A stretch of 64,000 nucleotides of DNA, taken from the sequence record MN047793.1, one strand, 5' to 3'. Below the pieces are notes generated by a model. The model saw nothing but the letters and a program-made list of their open reading frames with translations. It was not told the DNA's origin and searched no databases. Shown here piece by piece: positions 33,820-46,493 of the stretch (positions within the stretch are counted from its first letter, which is position 1; every line of letters begins with the position of its first letter). Position numbers and translations under genes: made by a program.

Positions 33820-33915
33820 GGGGAGTTAGCTCAGTTGGTAGAGCATCGGGCAATAAACCGGCCGGTTTGCTAGAAGTCCCGAGGGTCGATGGTTCGAGAC
33901 CATCACTCCCCACCA
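33820..33915 (+). ncRNA. tRNA-like RNA with a 27-nt anticodon loop
   Basis: GGGGAGT/ACTCCCC-A-CCA, canonical D and T arms, TCGGG/CCCGA stem enclosing 27 nt. Confidence 0.8.
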
Positions 33916-35864: not shown

Positions 35865-36227
35865 ATGAAATATATCCTCATTCTATTACTATTAATGTTG
35901 ACCGGCTGCAACAGACCACATTGGAGCCGTCAGATGTCTGATCTTGAAGTGAAAATTGCGACTGACAAATGCACTAAAAATCATCATGGAACAACTGAAT
36001 TAGCTGTTCGACAGATACGCCGTGGTTCTGATGAAACGTATGCCGTCAGATGCTATACTGAAGATGGATTAGTCAGTGTGACGTATTCTTATGTAGTTGA
36101 ATATGATCGGTGGGAACTTATATGCAAAGAACAACATTCAACGGTCGAAATGACCCCTAATGGATTGGCATGTAAGAATGATATTAGTAAGACTTCACTA
36201 GAAACTATCGCAGAAGATCATCTATAA
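35865..36227 (+). CDS. Putative lipoprotein
   Basis: MKYILILLLLMLTG|C lipobox. Confidence 0.65.
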   Translation: MKYILILLLLMLTGCNRPHWSRQMSDLEVKIATDKCTKNHHGTTELAVRQIRRGSDETYAVRCYTEDGLVSVTYSYVVEYDRWELICKEQHSTVEMTPNGLACKNDISKTSLETIAEDHL

Positions 36228-36264
36228 TTGTTGACATCTCAATTCGTTGTGTTATAATTTATCC

Positions 36265-36555
36265 ATGCCTACGATAACATACGACCAAACGTACATTAAT
36301 CTTCAGCGCGCATATGAAGTGTTGAAGTTACTGGCTGATCATAGTGATGAACCAGTAGTAGTGAATCGGTCATACATTCGTGACGATACGATTGGTTTGA
36401 ATTTCAAGTTCAAACGGTTGAATTATCTATTGGTCATGTCTAATGATAAAGAACGTAACTTTGCAGTGTGGTATACTTCCCGTCAAGGGCATGTAATTAA
36501 GAAGCCATATACAACAATTGAAATCTACACTCAAAAATTTATTGACAAGTCATAA
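36265..36555 (+). CDS. Hypothetical protein
   Basis: Start at MPTITY after the promoter. Confidence 0.55.
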   Translation: MPTITYDQTYINLQRAYEVLKLLADHSDEPVVVNRSYIRDDTIGLNFKFKRLNYLLVMSNDKERNFAVWYTSRQGHVIKKPYTTIEIYTQKFIDKS

Positions 36556-36593
36556 TTTGTGTAGTTAAATACTATCGTATCGGCATTATAACC

Positions 36594-36779
36594 ATGAAAA
36601 ATATTAAATTTCGCGAAAATTGGTCTAATGGTAAGGTTGATGTTTATCTTGATGACAGAGTAGTATATTCTTCGCGGGAATATAAATTTGCCGCAGAATA
36701 TGTAATGAGAAATCATGGTGTAACCGAGTCACAAATGCACGAGATTTACACCGATTATAAAGAAGATTACGACTCGTAA
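36594..36779 (+). CDS. Hypothetical protein
   Basis: 61-aa ORF. Confidence 0.5.
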   Translation: MKNIKFRENWSNGKVDVYLDDRVVYSSREYKFAAEYVMRNHGVTESQMHEIYTDYKEDYDS

Positions 36780-36790
36780 ATACAATATTT

Positions 36791-36866
36791 GGCCTTGTAG
36801 CTCAGCGGTCAGAGCAGGAGCCTCTAAAACTCTAGGTCGTGGGTTCGATCCCCACCAAGGCCACCA
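36791..36866 (+). tRNA. tRNA with CTA anticodon (amber suppressor-type), Lys-like body
   Basis: GGCCTTG/CAAGGCC-A-CCA; arm GGAGC-CTCTAAA-ACTCT; T arm like the neighbouring Lys(TTT). Confidence 0.85.
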
Positions 36867-36884
36867 AATTACAGGTACCCCAAC

Positions 36885-37508
36885 ATGCCTATAGGTAATA
36901 GCAAAGTAATGGTTACCAAGCATGTTATGGAACGGATTCAACAACGCTTCCCTAATTTGTTTGGAAAGTATTTCGGCAACGAAACCATGTTGCGAAATCT
37001 GATCATTGCTCAGGTTTCGACTGGTGAACGCTTAGAAGACTGGAAGCGGGTTCCATTTTATAAAAACAAAATGGATACCGAATATGGTCCAGGCACTGAG
37101 ATTGTTCGTAAGTCTGGTGTCTACTATCTGTGTCAGCTAACCGATAACAGTAAGTACCTTCGGGTGTTGACAGCAGTTCCAGGGACGCTCTATTACCCTA
37201 GAGCTGACTCCATTGCGGTCGGTACGAAGGGTGGAGCTAGATACTTCAATGTGAATGAGTACATTAACCGGTTGCATGGTGAGGCTCTAAAAGAGTATCG
37301 AATCCGTAGCAATGGGGTTAATCCCGCTCAGAAGCATGCTGGACACTCTTCATCGGCGGAATTTGCTCAAGTAAATGCACTAAAGCAGTCACTTAGACAA
37401 AATATCTACAACTCGCGGAAGAAAATGCTAAAGAATCCGCGTGATGTAGTAGGGCGATTGAAGCACGAAGAAAAATCGCCAAATTGCAAAAACAGCTTGA
37501 CGAATTAG
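36885..37508 (+). CDS. Hypothetical protein
   Basis: 207-aa ORF; N-terminal TKHVMERI.QRF resembles RelE-like folds (weak). Confidence 0.6.
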   Translation: MPIGNSKVMVTKHVMERIQQRFPNLFGKYFGNETMLRNLIIAQVSTGERLEDWKRVPFYKNKMDTEYGPGTEIVRKSGVYYLCQLTDNSKYLRVLTAVPGTLYYPRADSIAVGTKGGARYFNVNEYINRLHGEALKEYRIRSNGVNPAQKHAGHSSSAEFAQVNALKQSLRQNIYNSRKKMLKNPRDVVGRLKHEEKSPNCKNSLTN

Positions 37509-37534
37509 AAAAAAGTGGTAAATTATAGATGTAC

Positions 37535-37631
37535 GGGGAGTAAGCACATTGGTTATGGGCATCGACTGAGGAGGGAGTGAAACCTAACTCCGGCGAAGGT
37601 AGTGAGGTTCGATTCCTCATACTCTCCACCA
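37535..37631 (+). ncRNA. tRNA-like RNA with expanded anticodon domain
   Basis: GGGGAGT/ACTCTCC-A-CCA, T arm TGAGG-TTCGATT-CCTCA, internal GGAG/CTCC hairpin; own sigma70 promoter. Confidence 0.7.
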
Positions 37632-37666
37632 ATTAACGATCTTATTTAACACATTAGAGCGTACTA

Positions 37667-37978
37667 ATGAACGAAGTCCTCCAGAAAATGTTCCCCACCG
37701 GTGTCCTTAATGGACATGGTACCGAAGTGAATGGACTGAACGCTGGTGTGATTCCGCAAGGGGTCATCCTGAAACAGGCCCAGAGTAGTTTTGACAAATA
37801 TAACCGCAGGGAATGGTTTCTTGTGGAATCTGATGGATACACAGCATTACTGCGGGTATGCACTGCTAGTAAGGGTGCAGGTTATGATGAATTCGCGGTC
37901 ATTCGCGGTATTGTGCCTAGCAGTGATGCAACGCAAGTGGCTGAATTTCACAGGTTCTTTGAACAACAGACTAGCTAA
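37667..37978 (+). CDS. Hypothetical protein
   Basis: 103-aa ORF. Confidence 0.65.
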   Translation: MNEVLQKMFPTGVLNGHGTEVNGLNAGVIPQGVILKQAQSSFDKYNRREWFLVESDGYTALLRVCTASKGAGYDEFAVIRGIVPSSDATQVAEFHRFFEQQTS

Positions 37979-38081
37979 AAAGTAGTTGACAATTTGAAGA
38001 AACGTGGTAAAGTAGTTACATGAGGTGACGGCATCGAGGCCACTCACCAGTTCTTTTACAATTTGAGCGGTAATGAACGAA

Positions 38082-38296
38082 AGTTCATATATGGGAGCGG
38101 CTTCGGTAGGTTCGAATGCCAATCCATCGGATGTTGTCATGGTGAACGGCGTAAGCCCTATCCACTAGCTAGGAAAAAATGGCAGCAAGTTGAGATAACG
38201 CCACTAGCCCGGTATCTCTCTATTCACTATCAGGACTGTGTGCACGCTAATGTCCGGCGAATCCGAAAGCCAGAGGCCAATCCCATATATGATCTT
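38082..38296 (+). ncRNA. Multi-branched structured RNA cassette
   Basis: Perfect 12-bp closing helix TCATATATGGGA(38085-96)/TCCCATATATGA(38281-92); GNRA and T-loop-like hairpins inside. Confidence 0.65.
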
Positions 38297-38348
38297 AACA
38301 ACCACAAGAGGGCAATGAGTAATCATCCTGGCGGGGTTGTTGTGTTTA

Positions 38349-38472
38349 CGGCAGGTAAGCAAGGGGCCAAAGCTGGGCGCTTAAGGTGTAGATACTTGAA
38401 AAGGTATCAGAGATGGTAGAGTCTCCCACAAGCACCTCTAATTCGTAGGTTCGAATCCTACCCTGACGACCA
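38349..38472 (+). ncRNA. 124-nt tRNA-like RNA with a two-hairpin insert in the anticodon arm
   Basis: CGGCAGG/CCTGACG-A-CCA; Tyr-like D arm; T arm GTAGG-TTCGAAT-CCTAC. Confidence 0.7.
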
Positions 38473-38479
38473 AGTTAGT

Positions 38480-38563
38480 ATACACATTTGCTAGAAGGTG
38501 AGCCTTCGAAGTAAGCTAAGTAAGAAATACCGGAGAAAGCCCGAGCTTACAGCAGATGTGTAT
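38480..38563 (+). ncRNA. Stem-closed structured RNA cassette
   Basis: 13-bp helix ATACACATTTGCT/AGCAGATGTGTAT with inner GAAGG/CCTTC and GTAAGCT/AGCTTAC stems. Confidence 0.55.
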
Positions 38564-38669
38564 CTAAAAACGTAGGAATACTGCCCAAAGCCGGTTCCTA
38601 TTGTCTGGAATGCGATAAAAAATTGCCGAGCTAGCGTTTCTAGCCCATGTCCAGACACCCTTTTTAAAT

Positions 38670-38819
38670 ATTTTGGTGGCGAAAGTGGTATACGCGGGGG
38701 CCAAGGCCAATATGATGTGGGGAGCTAAACATTCTCCATGCTGCTCATGGCCGAAAACTGCTGTCTTAGACGTTGCAGCTATACGTGACGACATGTGGGT
38801 TCGACTCCCACCCAAAATA
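38670..38819 (+). ncRNA. 150-nt tRNA-like RNA (Leu-type D arm, ~100-nt insert, no encoded CCA)
   Basis: ATTTTGG/CCAAAAT; TGGCGAAAGTGGTATACGC; GTGGG-TTCGACT-CCCAC. Confidence 0.65.
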
Positions 38820-38894
38820 CTATATAAGTTATACTGTGACTTTCTACGGTAGAGTACTTGGAAACAAGCTCCGAATGTAGACACAGTTGCAATA

Positions 38895-38998
38895 TCAAAA
38901 ATACTCACGTATTTGGCACAGGAAAACCAGACGGAGTAATCGGTCGCTTATTTTCTCGGGTGCGTCCCCAGGATTTAGAGTGGTTAGAGTATTTTTGA
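38895..38998 (+). ncRNA. Stem-closed structured RNA cassette
   Basis: Perfect 12-bp IR TCAAAAATACTC/GAGTATTTTTGA. Confidence 0.5.
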
Positions 38999-39002
38999 AC
39001 AA

Positions 39003-39083
39003 TATGACTGTAGAGGGATTCGTCCCTCAGATGTTGAAATGAAGGACAGGAACACGGGAGTTCGATTCTCCCCAGGTCCACCA
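39003..39083 (+). ncRNA. ssrA: tmRNA acceptor piece (3' part of a permuted ssrA; 5' boundary approximate)
   Basis: GGGAG-TTCGATT-CTCCC T arm, CAGGTCC-A-CCA; pairs with GGGCCTG at 39231 giving G3:U70. Confidence 0.85.
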
Positions 39084-39230
39084 AAAATATATTACCCTAC
39101 CCAAGGGGTTGTCAGCAGGGTTGGAAGGACTGACACATGCAAAAACTATTCAGCCGTTGTAATGGCGTGTTGTTGGGAAGGTTCAAAATCCCGGTATAAA
39201 TGAATAGCGAATCCGTAATGTATTTTTGAT

Positions 39231-39410
39231 GGGCCTGCACTGGTTTCGACTCTTGGAGATAATGGAGATTGACAGTTGGTCACACAAGACTTTAAAATGA
39301 AGACAGAGAAGTCTCTAATCACAAAGAATTAAACGACAACGTTGATTCATTCGATTTCGCCATGGCGGCCTAATCCCAAGCACATCTAGCACTTGGTCAC
39401 CCGACGCTAG
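39231..39410 (+). ncRNA. ssrA: tmRNA coding piece (5' acceptor strand plus tag ORF; 3' boundary approximate)
   Basis: GGGCCTGcaCTGGTTTCGAC start; tag reading frame ...NDNVDSFDFAMAA* at 39332-39373. Confidence 0.88.
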
Positions 39411-39432
39411 AGCAATATGTAGTCTCGACTGC

Positions 39433-39534
39433 ATATTGTCCTACAATCTTGTGATATGTGTGGCTTCGTCTCCATACTCATAATCATGAATGTTATTCGG
39501 CCATGTCGATGTGGCTTAGATTGTAGGACAATAT
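39433..39534 (+). ncRNA. Stem-closed RNA cassette
   Basis: Perfect 17-bp IR ATATTGTCCTACAATCT/AGATTGTAGGACAATAT. Confidence 0.55.
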
Positions 39535-39542
39535 ACAGTTTT

Positions 39543-39686
39543 AGAGTGTATATTAAAGCCAAAGTTGCTATTAAATCTCGATAACTGGTTTAGGTCTTGC
39601 TCACCTTCCAGATAAACGAGAGCCTTGAGCGAGAAGGAATGAGGGGACGGCAGTCGCCCTCCAATGGAGGCTTTAATATACATTTT
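39543..39686 (+). ncRNA. Stem-closed RNA cassette
   Basis: 15-bp helix GTGTATATTAAAGCC(39546-60)/GGCTTTAATATACAT(39669-83). Confidence 0.55.
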
Positions 39687-39688
39687 AT

Positions 39689-39768
39689 GCGATAGTAGAT
39701 GTAAGCCAAGAATGGTAATGGTGGGGCTGTAGGGCTACGCATGCATGGTTCGAATCCATGCCATCGTC
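39689..39768 (+). pseudogene. Degenerate tRNA-like element
   Basis: GCGATAG/CCATCGT acceptor, CATGG-TTCGAAT-CCATG T arm, no clear anticodon arm or CCA. Confidence 0.4.
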
Positions 39769-39890
39769 AATCTATCGAAGTCAGAGCGGTCATTATGGCA
39801 CTCATATTTGATTTGAGTAAACGGCGTAAATGGTCTAACGGGACCTAGCTCTGGCGGTACTATTCTAGGAGAAGTGATATGGGTTGTGGA

Positions 39891-40160
39891 ATGAGTGCAG
39901 TACGTGATGATCAAGACGAATTAGCCGATATTTTAAAGCAATTTCGTCTCAATAATCATCCTGAATTTGGTAACATTGACGTTTATTCACATGAAGCACG
40001 ACTATTAAAGTCGTTAAGTCGTGATGTAACAGTAACGACAGAACAAGCAATTGAAAAGCTAGTGTGGGATAAGCATGAACGTGCAGCTAAGGCCGCGTTC
40101 GCCAAGGAAATGGAAGAGCGTAAGACTCTTGCCGAACTCCGTACTAAATACGGTAGTTAA
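39891..40160 (+). CDS. Hypothetical protein
   Basis: 89-aa ORF. Confidence 0.55.
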   Translation: MSAVRDDQDELADILKQFRLNNHPEFGNIDVYSHEARLLKSLSRDVTVTTEQAIEKLVWDKHERAAKAAFAKEMEERKTLAELRTKYGS

Positions 40161-40168
40161 AAGTTTAT

Positions 40169-40243
40169 GCGAGCTTAACTCAGTGGTAGAGTGTCAGCCT
40201 TCCAAGCTGTTCGTCATCGGTTCGAATCCGATAGTTCGCTCCA
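40169..40243 (+). tRNA. tRNA-Gly(TCC)
   Basis: Loop CTTCCAA, U73, CCA. Confidence 0.93.
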
Positions 40244-40247
40244 CATT

Positions 40248-40884
40248 TTGATGGGTGGTCGGTAGCTCTACAAGGCCCTATTATTACTCCATATCTTTAG
40301 CGAAAGTGCACGCCCGGAATTAACTGGGTCTGCGGTATGCAGAGGGAGATTGATTATTATCTACACATGACCCATCAATTTTTAATTGGATAGAGTGCAG
40401 TTAGCCGGTATCATTGGAAATATCCAAGCATCGCAAAGTGACAATGCCGATGATATCCTGATGCACATAATCCATACTAATACTGATGCGATAAAGTGTA
40501 AGTGGCTACATACAAGGCTCATAACCTTGAGTGCCGGTTCGACTCCGGAATTCGCTACCAAATTGTAAACATCATGCAAAATGTGTAAAAATAGTGATCA
40601 CTGATCGGCTAGTGAAACAGATTAGGATGTTGTTTACAACCAAATACCATCAGGTCAAAAGTTAACGACTAGTATTAACGAGTATGTGTAAGAACATATA
40701 CCTATGGTACCCAAATCAAAGCATGTGATTCATGCCCCGCCACATGGGAAGCGTGGCTCTGCTCTATCATTGCAAACTGTATATGATATGCGTTTTGATG
40801 GTTTCAAGTAAACCATTGGTGCTAAGCCGGTTTTGGGAGTCATTTTCTGCACCCGATAAAGAAAACTCCACATGGTCTGGTATT
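40248..40884 (+). ncRNA. Second block of stem-closed structured RNA cassettes
   Basis: Closing helices 40248-56/40370-78, 40563-70/40632-39, 40643-49/40878-84; T-loop+ACCA end at 40533-40560; no credible ORF. Confidence 0.5.
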
Positions 40885-40940
40885 GACAAATGCTTATACT
40901 GATGATAAAGTATTGGCTACTAAATTTCTAGGACATCTTT

Positions 40941-41204
40941 ATGAATATTCAAGCACGTGTTGTAAGTACGCACCAAGGCCATAAAGGTGATGGACAGCAA
41001 ATCCTCGACGCAGGACTCAATATCAATGACATCGTGGATGTTGATAAAATTGATATGGGTGGCTCCTATACCACAATCACTCTGAAAGGCCATAAGGGCT
41101 ATTTCAATAGTGTGAACTTCGAATTTTTGGAAAATGGTAAGATGCTGGATATCTACCAAGATAAGCGCTTCTTTTCTAACGATTATTTTATTAGTTCACA
41201 ATAA
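40941..41204 (+). CDS. Hypothetical protein
   Basis: AGGA RBS, promoter upstream. Confidence 0.65.
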   Translation: MNIQARVVSTHQGHKGDGQQILDAGLNINDIVDVDKIDMGGSYTTITLKGHKGYFNSVNFEFLENGKMLDIYQDKRFFSNDYFISSQ

Positions 41205-41839
41205 TTATATGTGAGGTAGTTGTTGGCTTTCATGAGGCCAGCCAAACCTTAAATGGTTGCTTCACCCCCAATTCGTAATAACATAGGAATTCAACATGAT
41301 GTATGAAGGCGGTCCCGTCTATCCTGAGATGACCAGCATCCCTAAAGACCACTTGGACCAACTCAAAAAGGTATTGAAGTGGGTCAAGGACAATCCAGGG
41401 ATTCATCCGGAAAATATCAAAACCGAATTGCGTAATTTGGAAAAACTTTTCGGAGTGTAATAAATAGAAATTCATAGAGGAGTACATTATGAAAAATCTA
41501 AGCGATAAAGATACAATGGTAGATACTGCGGTAGGTGAAGGCATTGCTTGCGAAGAGATTCGTAAGGTAGAACCAGATTGGACAATTAGCCAAGATAAGC
41601 AAGGCTAGTAAGTAAACTGCGACTATTTGTCGAACTGCTCCGGTGGAGTGGGCTTATGTAGGGCCAAAGTGTGCAGGGAGTTCCCCTAGTATCTCATTGC
41701 AACGACGTTACATAAGTTATGGACTAGGAATACCTCACGTTCTCAATTAGTAGTCTGACGAACGGTTGATTAATGACTATTCAAAGTGCCTTGTGGTAAA
41801 AAACTTTCGGTGATGAAAAGGCTATAACCGAACATATTT

Positions 41840-41924
41840 GGGCTGGTGGCGGAATTGGTAGACGCGCCAGATTTAGGTTCTGGTACCGAAAGGTGTGAGG
41901 GTTCGATTCCCTCCTAGCCCACCA
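41840..41924 (+). tRNA. tRNA-Leu(TAG)
   Basis: Type II, loop TTTAGGT. Confidence 0.95.
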
Positions 41925-42117
41925 ATAGATGATGGCGAACGATGTAAGGGCATCAAGTAGTCTAGCGAAGTGTATTCTAGTTGGAGCACAATAGCGAAGT
42001 GGCCTCGGAACACATGGGGAGAGACTAGATAGGCCGCATCCTAACTGCGTATGGTAATTCATATGAGAGTATTGAACACTGAAATAGCCGTTCGCGGTCC
42101 CCACTCTCACTAATTTT

Positions 42118-42192
42118 GGACCCTTCGTCTACTGGCTAGGATAGGAGCCTTTCAAGCTCTTGAAAGGGGATCGAAACCCCTAGGGTCTACCA
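42118..42192 (+). tRNA. tRNA-Glu(TTC)
   Basis: Loop CTTTCAA, CCA. Confidence 0.9.
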
Positions 42193-42254
42193 ACAATACT
42201 TGACAGATACGATTTGTTCGTATAAGATATCTATCAAGTAATCAAACATGTACC

Positions 42255-42301
42255 AGTGAGCAAGATTTCGCGGGTTATAGCTCACTCGGATGTAAACCCG
42301 C
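42255..42301 (+). ncRNA. H-type pseudoknot RNA element
   Basis: P1 AGTGAGC/GCTCACT, P2 GCGGGTT/AACCCGC interleaved. Confidence 0.6.
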
Positions 42302-42588
42302 CAATTTTTAAGTCTAGAGACCTTTGTGCAGACGGCCATTAAAGTGGGCTATGCATAGAATCGACAAAATTGCAATGATGCTACTCATTGTGGACAAAGC
42401 GATTGCTCTCGTAGCAGAGAGAACGGGTAGAAAAGTGAAGTTGGCCTGAATGCGGTTTGCTAGTATGGTTCGGAAACGCCGAAAGGGTTTGCCCAAGAAG
42501 ACAACACTGACTAACCAAGGTACTGTAGATTTTATTTGACAACTCCTGTGTTCTGATCTATAATTTAGAAAATCAAACGAGAACACCC

Positions 42589-43299
42589 ATGCTTATCAAG
42601 AATATTTCCCCAACTACTCTCATCACCAGTGGTGTTGGTGTTGCAGTGTCTTGGGTTATTGGTCTTATGACCGTTTCTGTTCTCTTCGTAGTGTTCAGCT
42701 ATCTCAACGATGCTCGGAACAATTACAACGCTGTCAAGCAACTGGATATTGTGTCTGTTGGCCGAATCCATACCTTCAGTGGTATTACGTCTAAGAATGG
42801 CTCCAACATTGTCCACCATGATTGTGTAGCTGTTGAAGTAAACAACGACGTTATGATGCGCGATAAGAGCGCTCCGTCCGGGTCAAGTGCTTATTGTAAT
42901 AATCTATTCATTGAATATCTTCCTAACTGGAAGTTGCTGGCTAGTCCGGATTCGATGAAGATTATTGAACGGTCGTTCTGGTCGGTGGCTATCTGTGTGG
43001 TCGTCATTGCTGGCTTCTATCTTGCTTTGCGTATTCCTGCAATCCTCATCTGCTGTGTCGTTAAGCCGTTGATGCCTTATTACAATTTGGTTACGTTTGT
43101 CTTCCTGCTTCCTGTGTTCTATGTCCTGGCTTTGTTCCTCAGTAGTGCATGGGAGTATCATCCTAAGCTCTGGGTGACGCCTGACGGCCGTGGCGTGAGT
43201 ACTGAAGCCATCTACGTCACTAAGGACGGAAGCCTCTACAATCGCCCGGAATCGTCCTTTGAGTGGACTCAGGCAAAAGCAGGTAAGCCGATTCGATGA
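42589..43299 (+). CDS. Multi-pass membrane protein
   Basis: One N-terminal and two C-terminal TM segments. Confidence 0.75.
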   Translation: MLIKNISPTTLITSGVGVAVSWVIGLMTVSVLFVVFSYLNDARNNYNAVKQLDIVSVGRIHTFSGITSKNGSNIVHHDCVAVEVNNDVMMRDKSAPSGSSAYCNNLFIEYLPNWKLLASPDSMKIIERSFWSVAICVVVIAGFYLALRIPAILICCVVKPLMPYYNLVTFVFLLPVFYVLALFLSSAWEYHPKLWVTPDGRGVSTEAIYVTKDGSLYNRPESSFEWTQAKAGKPIR

Positions 43300-46406: not shown

Positions 46407-46493
46407 GGCTCGTTGGCGGAACTGGTATACGCAACAGACTTAAAATCTGTCGCCCGAAAGGGCATGAGGGTTCGAATCCCTCACGGGCCACCA
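46407..46493 (+). tRNA. tRNA-Leu(TAA)
   Basis: Type II, loop CTTAAAA. Confidence 0.95.

What the first reader, a model, noticed from the sequence alone, without database searches (positions are those of the whole stretch)
39003..39410. Circularly permuted (two-piece) tmRNA encoded by a phage
The 3' half (T arm, CAGGTCC-ACCA, ends 39083) lies upstream of the 5' half (GGGCCTG..., starts 39231). They pair to give the alanine G3:U70 identity, and cross-pairings TCTTG/CAGGA and ACAGTT/GACTGT rebuild helix 2. No downstream complementary 3' end exists. The tag frame ends NDNVDSFDFAMAA*, a typical proteolysis tag, but lacks the usual GCA resume codon. Permuted ssrA is established in alphaproteobacteria and some cyano- and betaproteobacteria. 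A phage copy with a ~147-nt intervening segment is unusual.
Basis: partly seen in the sequence, partly recalled or inferred. Interest (0 to 1): 0.8.

Follow-up and report, generated by a model that had tools for sequence, protein, structure and literature searches.

The report
Two-piece tmRNA gene in Xanthomonas phage
The jumbo phage Xoo-sp13 carries a real but unannotated "circularly permuted" tmRNA (ribosome-rescue RNA) gene; this is a diverged copy of a type already known from bacteria and many phages, so it is a sound annotation but not a new kind of thing.

Summary
The window is Xanthomonas phage Xoo-sp13 (MN047793). At 39005-39438 (+) it holds a permuted tmRNA gene. The 3' half of the tRNA-like domain (T arm, CAGGUCC-ACCA) comes first. 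A 147-nt intervening segment follows, and then the 5' half (GGGCCUG, G3:U70) with the tag frame.

Rfam tmRNA_permuted scores 65.7 bits against a cut-off of 47. ARAGORN calls it "Permuted" only just below its default threshold. Against the sister gene in phage XacN1, 44 homologous pairs show 12 compensatory changes and none broken. An independent family alignment recovers the same helices.

By homology the resume codon is GAC (Asp), which aligns with XacN1's GCC. The tag is therefore (A)DNVDSFDFAMAA.

The "unusual" part does not hold:
- Phage two-piece tmRNAs are published (Melnitz; 53 in a 2022 survey that lists XacN1).
- I found 81 viral contigs with the same layout. All that passed a lineage-specific model were beta-type, and their intervening segments span 25-194 nt.

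New details are a gene end at 39438, two lineage-specific hairpin inserts, a covarying stem that closes the intervening segment, and a tag ending that resembles the host's. Verdict: new member of a known kind, modest interest.

The parts
39005..39011 (+). Distal P2 helix, acceptor-piece strand (UGACUGU). This is the approximate 5' end of the acceptor piece.
   Evidence: Pairs with 39272-39278 (7 bp). The homologous XacN1 helix UGGUCGU/GCGACUA differs by 3 compensatory double changes. Recovered by RNAalifold on the family and by automated alignment, 6/6.
39013..39028 (+). Xoo-sp13-specific inserted hairpin A (GAGGGA-UUCG-UCCCUC).
   Evidence: 6/6 pairs with a UUCG tetraloop. Absent from XacN1 and the family alignment. 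It shifts the distal P2 strand about 15 nt further from the T arm.
39047..39051 (+). P2a helix, acceptor-piece strand (CAGGA).
   Evidence: Pairs with UCUUG 39251-55. There are 4 double changes relative to XacN1 CGUUC/GGGCG. In the family, cognate strands pair 6.75/7 against 4.52/7 for non-cognate, across 27 duplex types.
39056..39072 (+). T arm (GGGAG UUCGAUU CUCCC).
   Evidence: Rfam alignment. 5/5 pairs, with 2 compensatory changes relative to XacN1.
39073..39083 (+). Acceptor 3' strand CAGGUCC, discriminator A, encoded CCA (3' end of the acceptor piece).
   Evidence: Pairs with GGGCCUG 39231-37, including G3:U70.
39084..39230 (+). Intervening segment (147 nt), excised from the precursor. 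Its two ends (39083-39095 and 39215-39227) pair and extend the acceptor stem.
   Evidence: The family consensus has 11 covarying pairs here, and Xoo-sp13 keeps 11/11. The fold of 39073-39237 gives -55 kcal/mol, z = -3.68, with 0/200 shuffles as stable. XacN1 behaves likewise.
39231..39250 (+). 5' end of the coding piece: acceptor 5' strand GGGCCUG plus the D-loop analogue (CACUGGUUUCGAC).
   Evidence: GGUUUCGA is nearly invariant in the family. Supported by Rfam and ARAGORN.
39251..39255 (+). P2a helix, coding-piece strand (UCUUG).
   Evidence: See P2a above.
39272..39278 (+). Distal P2 helix, coding-piece strand (ACAGUUG).
   Evidence: See distal P2 above.
39278..39291 (+). Xoo-sp13-specific inserted hairpin B (GGUC-ACACAA-GACU).
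   Evidence: 4/4 pairs. XacN1 has no counterpart; its single hairpin matches the next one (read directly from the sequences).
39301..39314 (+). PK1-position hairpin (AGAC-AGAGAA-GUCU), orthologous to XacN1 AGCC-AGAGUA-GGCU.
   Evidence: One compensatory change (A-U to C-G). The family hairpin at this position covaries. A second pseudoknot stem was not demonstrable.
39335..39373 (+). Tag reading frame: resume codon GAC (Asp), giving DNVDSFDFAMAA, then stop TAA (39371-73).
   Evidence: ARAGORN -ps. Gap-free alignment to XacN1 GCC AAC ... UAA, 12 codons each. The upstream UAAAC matches the family motif GUAAA[U/C] before GCA.
39376..39411 (+). Post-tag pseudoknot: S1 CCAAG/CUUGG (39376-80 / 39392-96); S2 UCUAGC/GCUAGA (39385-90 / 39406-11).
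   Evidence: This is the most conserved block relative to XacN1. S2 has one compensatory change (U-A to C-G). S2 corresponds to a helix of the beta_tmRNA model.
39413..39438 (+). 3'-terminal hairpin of the coding piece (CAAUAUGUAG-UCUCGA-CUGCAUAUUG); probable gene end.
   Evidence: 10/10 pairs. Corresponds to the last helix of RF01850 as aligned to XacN1.

Best explanation
This is a functional ssrA gene of the circularly permuted, betaproteobacterial (RF01850-like) type, carried in the tRNA array of jumbo phage Xoo-sp13.

Inferred mechanism:
- The region of about 39005-39438 is transcribed as one precursor. In that precursor the ends of the 147-nt intervening segment pair and extend the acceptor stem.
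- Host tRNA-processing enzymes cut 5' of G39231 (RNase P) and trim to the encoded CCA at 39083, releasing the intervening hairpin.
- This leaves an acceptor piece of about 79 nt and a coding piece of about 208 nt. They are held together by the 7-bp acceptor stem and the P2a and distal P2 helices.
- The complex is charged with alanine through G3:U70 and A73. With host SmpB it enters stalled ribosomes and resumes translation at GAC 39335, adding (A)DNVDSFDFAMAA. The hydrophobic ...AMAA end of that tag should direct host proteases.
- For the phage, it most likely keeps ribosomes recycling late in a long infection, alongside the phage's own set of 26 or more tRNAs.

Shown: the gene anatomy, its homology and selection on its structure. 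Inferred: processing, charging, tagging and the benefit to the phage.
For: - Rfam RF04321 scores 65.7 bits (cut-off 47, E = 2e-10) over 39030-39373.
- ARAGORN -ps gives a single 'Permuted' call with tag DNVDSFDFAMAA.
- The orthologue in XacN1 passes RF01850 (107.8 bits against 84) and RF04321 (123 bits), and default ARAGORN calls it tmRNA*.
- Xoo-sp13 against XacN1: 44 homologous pairs in 8 helices, of which 29 are the same, 3 changed on one side, 12 compensatory and 0 broken.
- RNAalifold on 24 independent relatives recovers the distal P2, P2a, T, acceptor, intervening-segment stem and PK1 hairpin. 31 of the 42 pairs show compensatory changes.
- An automated projection onto Xoo-sp13 gives 6/6, 5/7, 5/5, 8/8 and 11/11 for distal P2, P2a, T stem, acceptor and intervening-segment stem.
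- The tag is the same length as XacN1's, with a conserved C-terminal half FD[FY]A[ML]AA.
- The same layout occurs in 81 viral contigs, many internal to contigs over 100 kb and inside tRNA arrays.
- No downstream 3' half exists.
Against: - The gene fails the lineage-specific RF01850 cut-off (17.8 bits, local match only) and ARAGORN's default threshold.
- P2a has only 5/7 pairs, with an A·C next to the T-arm linker.
- The resume codon is Asp rather than Ala.
- No second PK1 stem could be shown.
- Two inserts are absent from all relatives.
- No promoter was identified upstream.
- There is no expression, processing or charging data.
- I did not test whether the phage or only the host supplies SmpB.
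Confidence: 0.85

Rival explanations
1. The gene is a decaying relic. It descends from a working permuted tmRNA but no longer functions in Xoo-sp13.
For: - It has the lowest model score of all relatives: 65.7 bits against 88-140 for the others.
- It misses ARAGORN's default threshold.
- It has a non-Ala resume codon, an A·C mismatch in P2a and two extra hairpins.
Against: - None of 44 homologous pairs is broken, and 12 are compensatory.
- The T loop, D-loop analogue, G3:U70 and CCA are intact.
- The tag frame is open, has the same length as XacN1's, and its C-terminal half is conserved.
- The inserts are themselves perfect hairpins.
- L120 and L121 share the AACAC junction.
Confidence: 0.07
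2. The two halves are separate transcription units and not one precursor. The acceptor piece would end at a terminator inside the intervening segment, and the coding piece would start from its own promoter.
For: A weak terminator-like hairpin lies at 39153-39166 within the intervening segment. The segment is longer than the roughly 30-nt consensus of the bacterial beta model.
Against: - The two ends of the intervening segment pair with each other, with strong covariation across the family, and 11/11 in Xoo-sp13. That only makes sense on a single transcript.
- The scan found no promoter in the segment on the + strand.
- Single-precursor processing is the established route for permuted tmRNA (PMC11915505).
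Confidence: 0.05
3. The RNA acts mainly as a competitor or decoy for host tmRNA-SmpB and does not tag proteins. This would resemble the tRNA-like-domain-only RNA of mycobacteriophage DS6A.
For: Phage tRNA-like-domain-only molecules that inhibit host tmRNA are on record (PMC4131195; PMC11915505). The atypical resume codon could reduce tagging.
Against: A complete coding piece is conserved and covaries. It includes the resume context UAAAC, a 12-codon frame, a post-tag pseudoknot and a terminal hairpin. A decoy would not need these.
Confidence: 0.03
4. The permuted order is an assembly artefact of a normal one-piece ssrA gene.
For: None found.
Against: The same order occurs in the independently sequenced XacN1 genome and in 81 viral contigs. 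There is no downstream 3' half. The intervening-segment stem covaries.
Confidence: 0.005

Closest known systems
Permuted tmRNA of Xanthomonas phage XacN1 (AP018399, about 37177-37596; two copies, in the terminal repeats)
   Same: It is the orthologue. It sits in a syntenic position in the tRNA array, between a tRNA(CUA) suppressor and tRNA-Gly(UCC). It has the same helices, a 12-codon tag, a nearly identical post-tag pseudoknot block and a long intervening segment of 114 nt.
   Different: XacN1 has the canonical Ala resume codon (GCC; tag ANANTFDYALAA), lacks hairpins A and B, and passes RF01850 and default ARAGORN. It was listed as 'Permuted' in a supplementary table but is absent from its genome paper and from its GenBank record.
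Betaproteobacterial two-piece tmRNA (Rfam RF01850; third permuted lineage, Sharkady & Williams 2004 as cited in PMC9004378)
   Same: The gene order, tRNA-like domain, P2 architecture, post-tag helix and terminal hairpin are the same. 16 of 20 viral relatives, and XacN1, pass this model.
   Different: Xoo-sp13 itself reaches only 17.8 bits, as a local match. The host is a gammaproteobacterium with a one-piece-style tag, ANDDNYGSDFAIAA. The intervening segment is 147 nt against about 30 consensus positions. The acceptor has C4:G69 where the model consensus has G4:C69.
Two-piece tmRNAs of marine phages (Methylophilales phage Melnitz, pelagimyophages, cyanophages; PMC9004378)
   Same: These are phage-encoded permuted ssrA genes, proposed to sustain or exploit host translation.
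   Different: They belong to the alpha or cyano lineages, come from marine hosts, and some sit behind a glutamine riboswitch. Rfam found no riboswitch here.
One-piece tmRNAs of mycobacteriophages (Bxz1 group) and Bacillus phage G; the tRNA-like-domain-only RNA of DS6A (PMC4131195)
   Same: They are phage-borne ssrA genes in large, tRNA-rich genomes.
   Different: They have the standard, unpermuted gene order, or lack a tag frame altogether.

Membership tests
tmRNA (any form) | tRNA-like domain: 7-bp acceptor stem with G3:U70, discriminator A, 3' CCA, and a T arm with a GUUCGANUC-type loop | tested here: met
   GGGCCUG/CAGGUCC-A-CCA and GGGAG-UUCGAUU-CUCCC.
tmRNA (any form) | Conserved D-loop analogue (GGUUUCGAC) directly after the 5' acceptor strand | tested here: met
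   Located at 39242-39250. It is nearly invariant in 64 relatives.
tmRNA (any form) | Short internal reading frame with a resume-codon context, ending in a hydrophobic Ala-rich C-terminus plus stop | tested here: met
   UAAAC|GAC ... GCC AUG GCG GCC UAA gives DNVDSFDFAMAA. It aligns without gaps to XacN1's tag. The resume codon is Asp rather than Ala. Non-Ala resume residues (G, V) occur in known tags (table in PMC12493166).
tmRNA (any form) | Pseudoknot PK1 upstream of the resume codon | tested here: inconclusive
   The hairpin at 39301-14 is orthologous to XacN1's and covaries in the family. No convincing second stem was found in either Xanthomonas phage.
Permuted (two-piece) tmRNA, Rfam RF04321 | The 3' half of the tRNA-like domain lies upstream of the 5' half on the same strand, joined by P2 pairings; score at or above the gathering cut-off | tested here: met
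   65.7 bits against a cut-off of 47. The P2a and distal P2 helices covary.
Beta-type permuted tmRNA, Rfam RF01850 | Score at or above the gathering cut-off of 84 bits | tested here: not met
   17.8 bits, a local match to the tag and post-tag helix only. The sister gene in XacN1 scores 107.8 bits, so lineage membership rests on orthology and not on the model score.
Beta-type permuted tmRNA, Rfam RF01850 | Post-tag helix and 3'-terminal hairpin in the model's positions | tested here: met
   S2 at 39385-90/39406-11 and the hairpin at 39413-38 correspond to the last two helices of the model as aligned to XacN1.
ARAGORN tmRNA call | Detected at the default threshold | tested here: not met
   Not reported by default. 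It is the only call at -ps (95% threshold).
Two-piece tmRNA (functional definition) | The precursor is cleaved into two RNAs, the RNA is alanylated, it binds SmpB, and it tags proteins on stalled ribosomes | not testable with these tools
   This needs northern blots or RACE, an in vitro AlaRS assay, and reporter tagging with mass spectrometry.

The most novel reading that the evidence does not exclude
The two Xanthomonas jumbo phages inherited a betaproteobacterial-lineage two-piece tmRNA and re-tuned it to a gammaproteobacterial host. Among 61 phage tags, only theirs end D-[F/Y]-A-[L/M]-A-A, like the Xanthomonas host tag ...SDFAIAA. Xoo-sp13 additionally resumes on Asp. On this reading the phage tmRNA is a host-matched module that feeds stalled-ribosome products into the host's own degradation pathway, or that rescues ribosomes after mRNA- or tRNA-cleaving defences act. 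It would be more than a passive passenger.
Probability: 0.2. Interest if true: 0.55.

Novelty: new member of a known kind. Interest (0 to 1): 0.3.

Why it matters
- It adds a missing RNA gene to the Xoo-sp13 record, which lists no RNA features in this stretch.
- It shows that default ARAGORN, and surveys based on it, miss diverged phage tmRNAs that the newer merged Rfam model catches.
- It links two soil Xanthomonas phages to a large, mostly uncultivated set of phages carrying beta-type permuted tmRNAs. A lineage-mismatched gene (beta-type in a gammaproteobacterial host) is a marker of past host shifts or phage-to-phage exchange.
- The covarying stem that closes the intervening segment, and the host-like tag ending, are small, testable leads on how phage tmRNA precursors are processed and why phages keep them.
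- None of this changes the general picture of trans-translation.

Tried and rejected
- A motif scan for GGTTTCGAC...TAAACGACAAC in viral contigs returned only ordinary one-piece tmRNAs, which are not relatives.
- Exact scans for the conserved post-tag block found nothing in viral or metagenome contigs.
- A scan for the acceptor-piece signature of the Xoo-sp13/XacN1 pair found only two ordinary beta-type phage tmRNAs. XacN1 therefore remains the only close relative.
- The single genome-contig scan (GGGCCTG-N4-GGTTTCGA) was swamped by chance matches. Of 120 rows, 0 were permuted and 9 were standard, and spot checks found no tmRNA. The bacterial source of this subtype is unresolved.
- Thermodynamic cofolding of the two pieces recovered the acceptor stem and T arm but not P2, and the binding gain was not significant against shuffles (z = -1.2). 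P2 therefore rests on comparative evidence.
- Rfam's own alignment of the window mis-registers the distal P2 helix and the PK1 hairpin. I corrected this through the XacN1 orthologue.
- A family covariance model could not be calibrated within the time limit. I used MAFFT --add with projection of the RNAalifold pairs instead.
- The Sharkady & Williams 2004 paper is not in the library.
- No GOLLD or other large RNA was found in the window's ORF-poor flanks.

Full report
IDENTITY OF THE WINDOW. The window is 100% identical to Xanthomonas phage Xoo-sp13 (MN047793.1, 309 kb, host X. oryzae pv. oryzae) at the same coordinates. The GenBank record lists only protein-coding genes between 35900 and 42600, and nothing at all between 37979 and 39878. 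ARAGORN finds 26 tRNA genes between 32.6 and 52.9 kb, so the finding lies inside the phage's tRNA array.

CHECK OF THE OBSERVATION.
- T arm: GGGAG-UUCGAUU-CUCCC at 39056-72.
- Acceptor 3' strand CAGGUCC at 39073-79, followed by ACCA at 39080-83.
- Acceptor 5' strand GGGCCUG at 39231-37. This gives seven pairs with G3:U70 and discriminator A.
- D-loop analogue GGUUUCGAC at 39242-50.
- A frame ending ...DNVDSFDFAMAA-UAA, with the stop at 39371-73.

Rfam's merged model for permuted tmRNA (RF04321) matches 39030-39373 with 65.7 bits against a gathering score of 47 (E = 2e-10 for the whole window). ARAGORN does not report the gene at its default threshold. At -ps it gives exactly one call, "Permuted", spanning 38988-39464 with tag DNVDSFDFAMAA. 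No alternative 3' acceptor strand lies within 2.2 kb downstream.

THE ORTHOLOGUE IN XacN1. The only other record in the phage collection that matches this stretch is Xanthomonas citri jumbo phage XacN1. There the syntenic gene passes both RF04321 (123 bits) and the lineage-specific betaproteobacterial model RF01850 (107.8 bits against 84). Default ARAGORN calls it permuted, with tag ANANTFDYALAA. The two genes align along their whole length.

I used the RF01850 structure on XacN1 as a guide and mapped eight helices in Xoo-sp13. Across 44 homologous base pairs, 29 are identical, 3 differ on one side, 12 are compensatory double changes and none is broken. Rfam's automatic alignment of the window had slipped at the distal P2 helix and at the PK1 hairpin.

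THE WIDER FAMILY. I scanned IMG/VR viral contigs for the shared T-arm/acceptor signature.
- Of 20 diverse loci tested, 16 pass RF01850 and all 20 pass RF04321.
- Default ARAGORN calls nearly all of them permuted, with canonical tags such as ANDERFALAA.
- Many lie inside tRNA arrays and well inside contigs of 90-286 kb. They are therefore phage genes and not host ssrA at a prophage edge.

Covariation in the family supports the structure.
- P2a pairs 6.75/7 with its cognate strand against 4.52/7 with non-cognate strands, over 27 distinct duplexes.
- RNAalifold on 24 relatives, excluding both Xanthomonas phages, recovers the distal P2, P2a, T arm, acceptor stem and PK1 hairpin. 31 of the 42 pairs show compensatory changes.
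- After Xoo-sp13 was added automatically to that alignment, it keeps 6/6, 5/7, 5/5 and 8/8 of the distal P2, P2a, T stem and acceptor pairs.

INTERVENING SEGMENT. The family consensus contains an unexpected extra helix. The first bases after CCA pair with the last bases before G1, which extends the acceptor stem. This helix has 11 pairs with strong covariation. Xoo-sp13 keeps 11/11 of them (39083-95 with 39215-27). The stretch 39073-39237 folds into one long hairpin (z = -3.7, with 0 of 200 shuffles as stable), and XacN1 does the same.

This argues for a single precursor whose intervening hairpin is excised. The segment's length of 147 nt is not exceptional: in 65 unique relatives it ranges from 25 to 194 nt, with a median of 87. 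It is, however, longer than the roughly 30 consensus positions of the bacterial model.

TAG AND RESUME CODON. Without gaps, Xoo-sp13 UAAAC GAC AAC GUU ... GCC UAA aligns to XacN1 UAACU GCC AAC GCA ... GCC UAA, with 12 codons each. The family motif before the resume codon is GUAAA[U/C].

53 of 61 inferred family tags start with Ala. Known bacterial tags starting with G or V show that this is not disqualifying (table in PMC12493166). The C-terminal half is conserved between the two Xanthomonas phages (FD[FY]A[ML]AA). Among the 61 tags, only these two end D[FY]A[ILMV]AA. That resembles the X. campestris tag ANDDNYGSDFAIAA. This hints at tuning to the host, but it rests on two sister genes only.

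FEATURES SPECIFIC TO Xoo-sp13.
- A perfect UUCG-capped hairpin (39013-28) is inserted in the acceptor piece.
- An extra hairpin (39278-91) lies ahead of the PK1-position hairpin (39301-14).
- An A·C juxtaposition sits at the inner end of P2a. Relatives L120 and L121 share the same AACAC junction.
- After the stop codon come a pseudoknot (39376-39411) and a 10-bp terminal hairpin (39413-38).

MECHANISM. The gene anatomy, its homology and purifying selection on its structure are shown here. The following steps are inferred from established tmRNA biology (summarised in PMC11915505 and PMC9004378):
- transcription as one precursor;
- RNase P cleavage before G39231 and 3' maturation to the encoded CCA;
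- a two-piece RNA held together by the acceptor stem and P2;
- alanylation through G3:U70;
- SmpB-dependent entry into stalled ribosomes;
- addition of (A)DNVDSFDFAMAA.

I found no convincing upstream promoter. Flanking tRNA-like genes suggest co-transcription with the array. I did not test whether the phage encodes SmpB.

WHAT IS ALREADY KNOWN. Permuted tmRNA is established in three bacterial lineages. Phage tmRNAs have been known since the mycobacteriophages. Buchholz et al. 2022 described the two-piece tmRNA of phage Melnitz and counted 53 two-piece tmRNAs among 18,146 phage genomes, 50 of them aquatic. Their Table S1 lists XacN1 as "Permuted, soil" but does not list Xoo-sp13. The XacN1 genome paper never mentions a tmRNA. 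The 2025 tmRNA database holds 79 phage sequences.

VERDICT. The finding is correct and is a useful annotation. It is a diverged new member of a known kind, with a few lineage-specific variations. Interest is modest.

Noticed in passing
window 38349-38472, 38670-38820, 39579-39768 (+): With introns allowed, ARAGORN calls three interrupted tRNA-like genes in the ORF-poor flanks of the tmRNA: Leu(UAA) with a 36-nt insert, Ser(GCU) with 58 nt, and Trp(CCA) with 101 nt. The first coincides with a sub-threshold Rfam tRNA hit of 24.8 bits. Uninterrupted genes for the same anticodons exist at 46407, 51607 and 44972. They could be pseudo-tRNAs, insert-bearing tRNAs or false positives.
   Followed up: partly
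window 39083-39095 with 39215-39227; family alignment A2 columns 77-88 / 147-158: The two ends of the intervening segment pair and extend the acceptor stem in the precursor. The helix has 11 pairs that covary strongly across 24 phage relatives and is kept 11/11 in Xoo-sp13. The Rfam permuted models do not annotate this helix.
   Followed up: yes
window 36791-36866 (+); L002 54-212; L028 672-1059: Xoo-sp13 has an amber-suppressor-type tRNA (anticodon CUA) about 2 kb upstream of the tmRNA. XacN1 has two such tRNAs in the same position, and an unrelated viral contig (L028) also has two beside its permuted tmRNA. The recurrent pairing of suppressor tRNA with tmRNA is unexplained.
   Followed up: no
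L002 2577-2990 (XacN1 record 38570-38983): XacN1 has a GOLLD RNA (227 bits, cut-off 150) between its tmRNA and tRNA-Gly. It is unannotated in the record. Nothing comparable was detected at the syntenic place in Xoo-sp13.
   Followed up: partly
window 39269-39298 (+): A near-consensus sigma-70-like site (TTGACA, 18 nt, TAAAAT; 11/12) lies inside the coding piece. It overlaps the distal P2 strand and the Xoo-specific hairpin B insert. It may be chance or an internal start.
   Followed up: no
L035, L048, L071, L081, L111; L020, L074, L093 (viral contigs): Some phage beta-type permuted tmRNAs encode unusually long tags of 28-31 residues. They share cores such as ...KVSMGRGFRFARGTEALAA or ANADTFDFSAMSFTGN...ALAA.
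   Followed up: no
window 33820-33915 (+): ARAGORN reports a 96-nt tRNA-Tyr with the unusual anticodon AUA. Rfam also scores it as a tRNA at 57 bits.
   Followed up: no
window 35900-42600 (MN047793 annotation): The GenBank record lists only CDS features in this stretch. None of the tRNA genes found here (for example 36791, 40169, 41840, 42118), nor the tmRNA, is annotated.
   Followed up: partly
L014 934-1161 (-): A group I intron (59.6 bits) lies a few hundred bases from the permuted tmRNA, within a tRNA array of an 87-kb viral contig.
   Followed up: no
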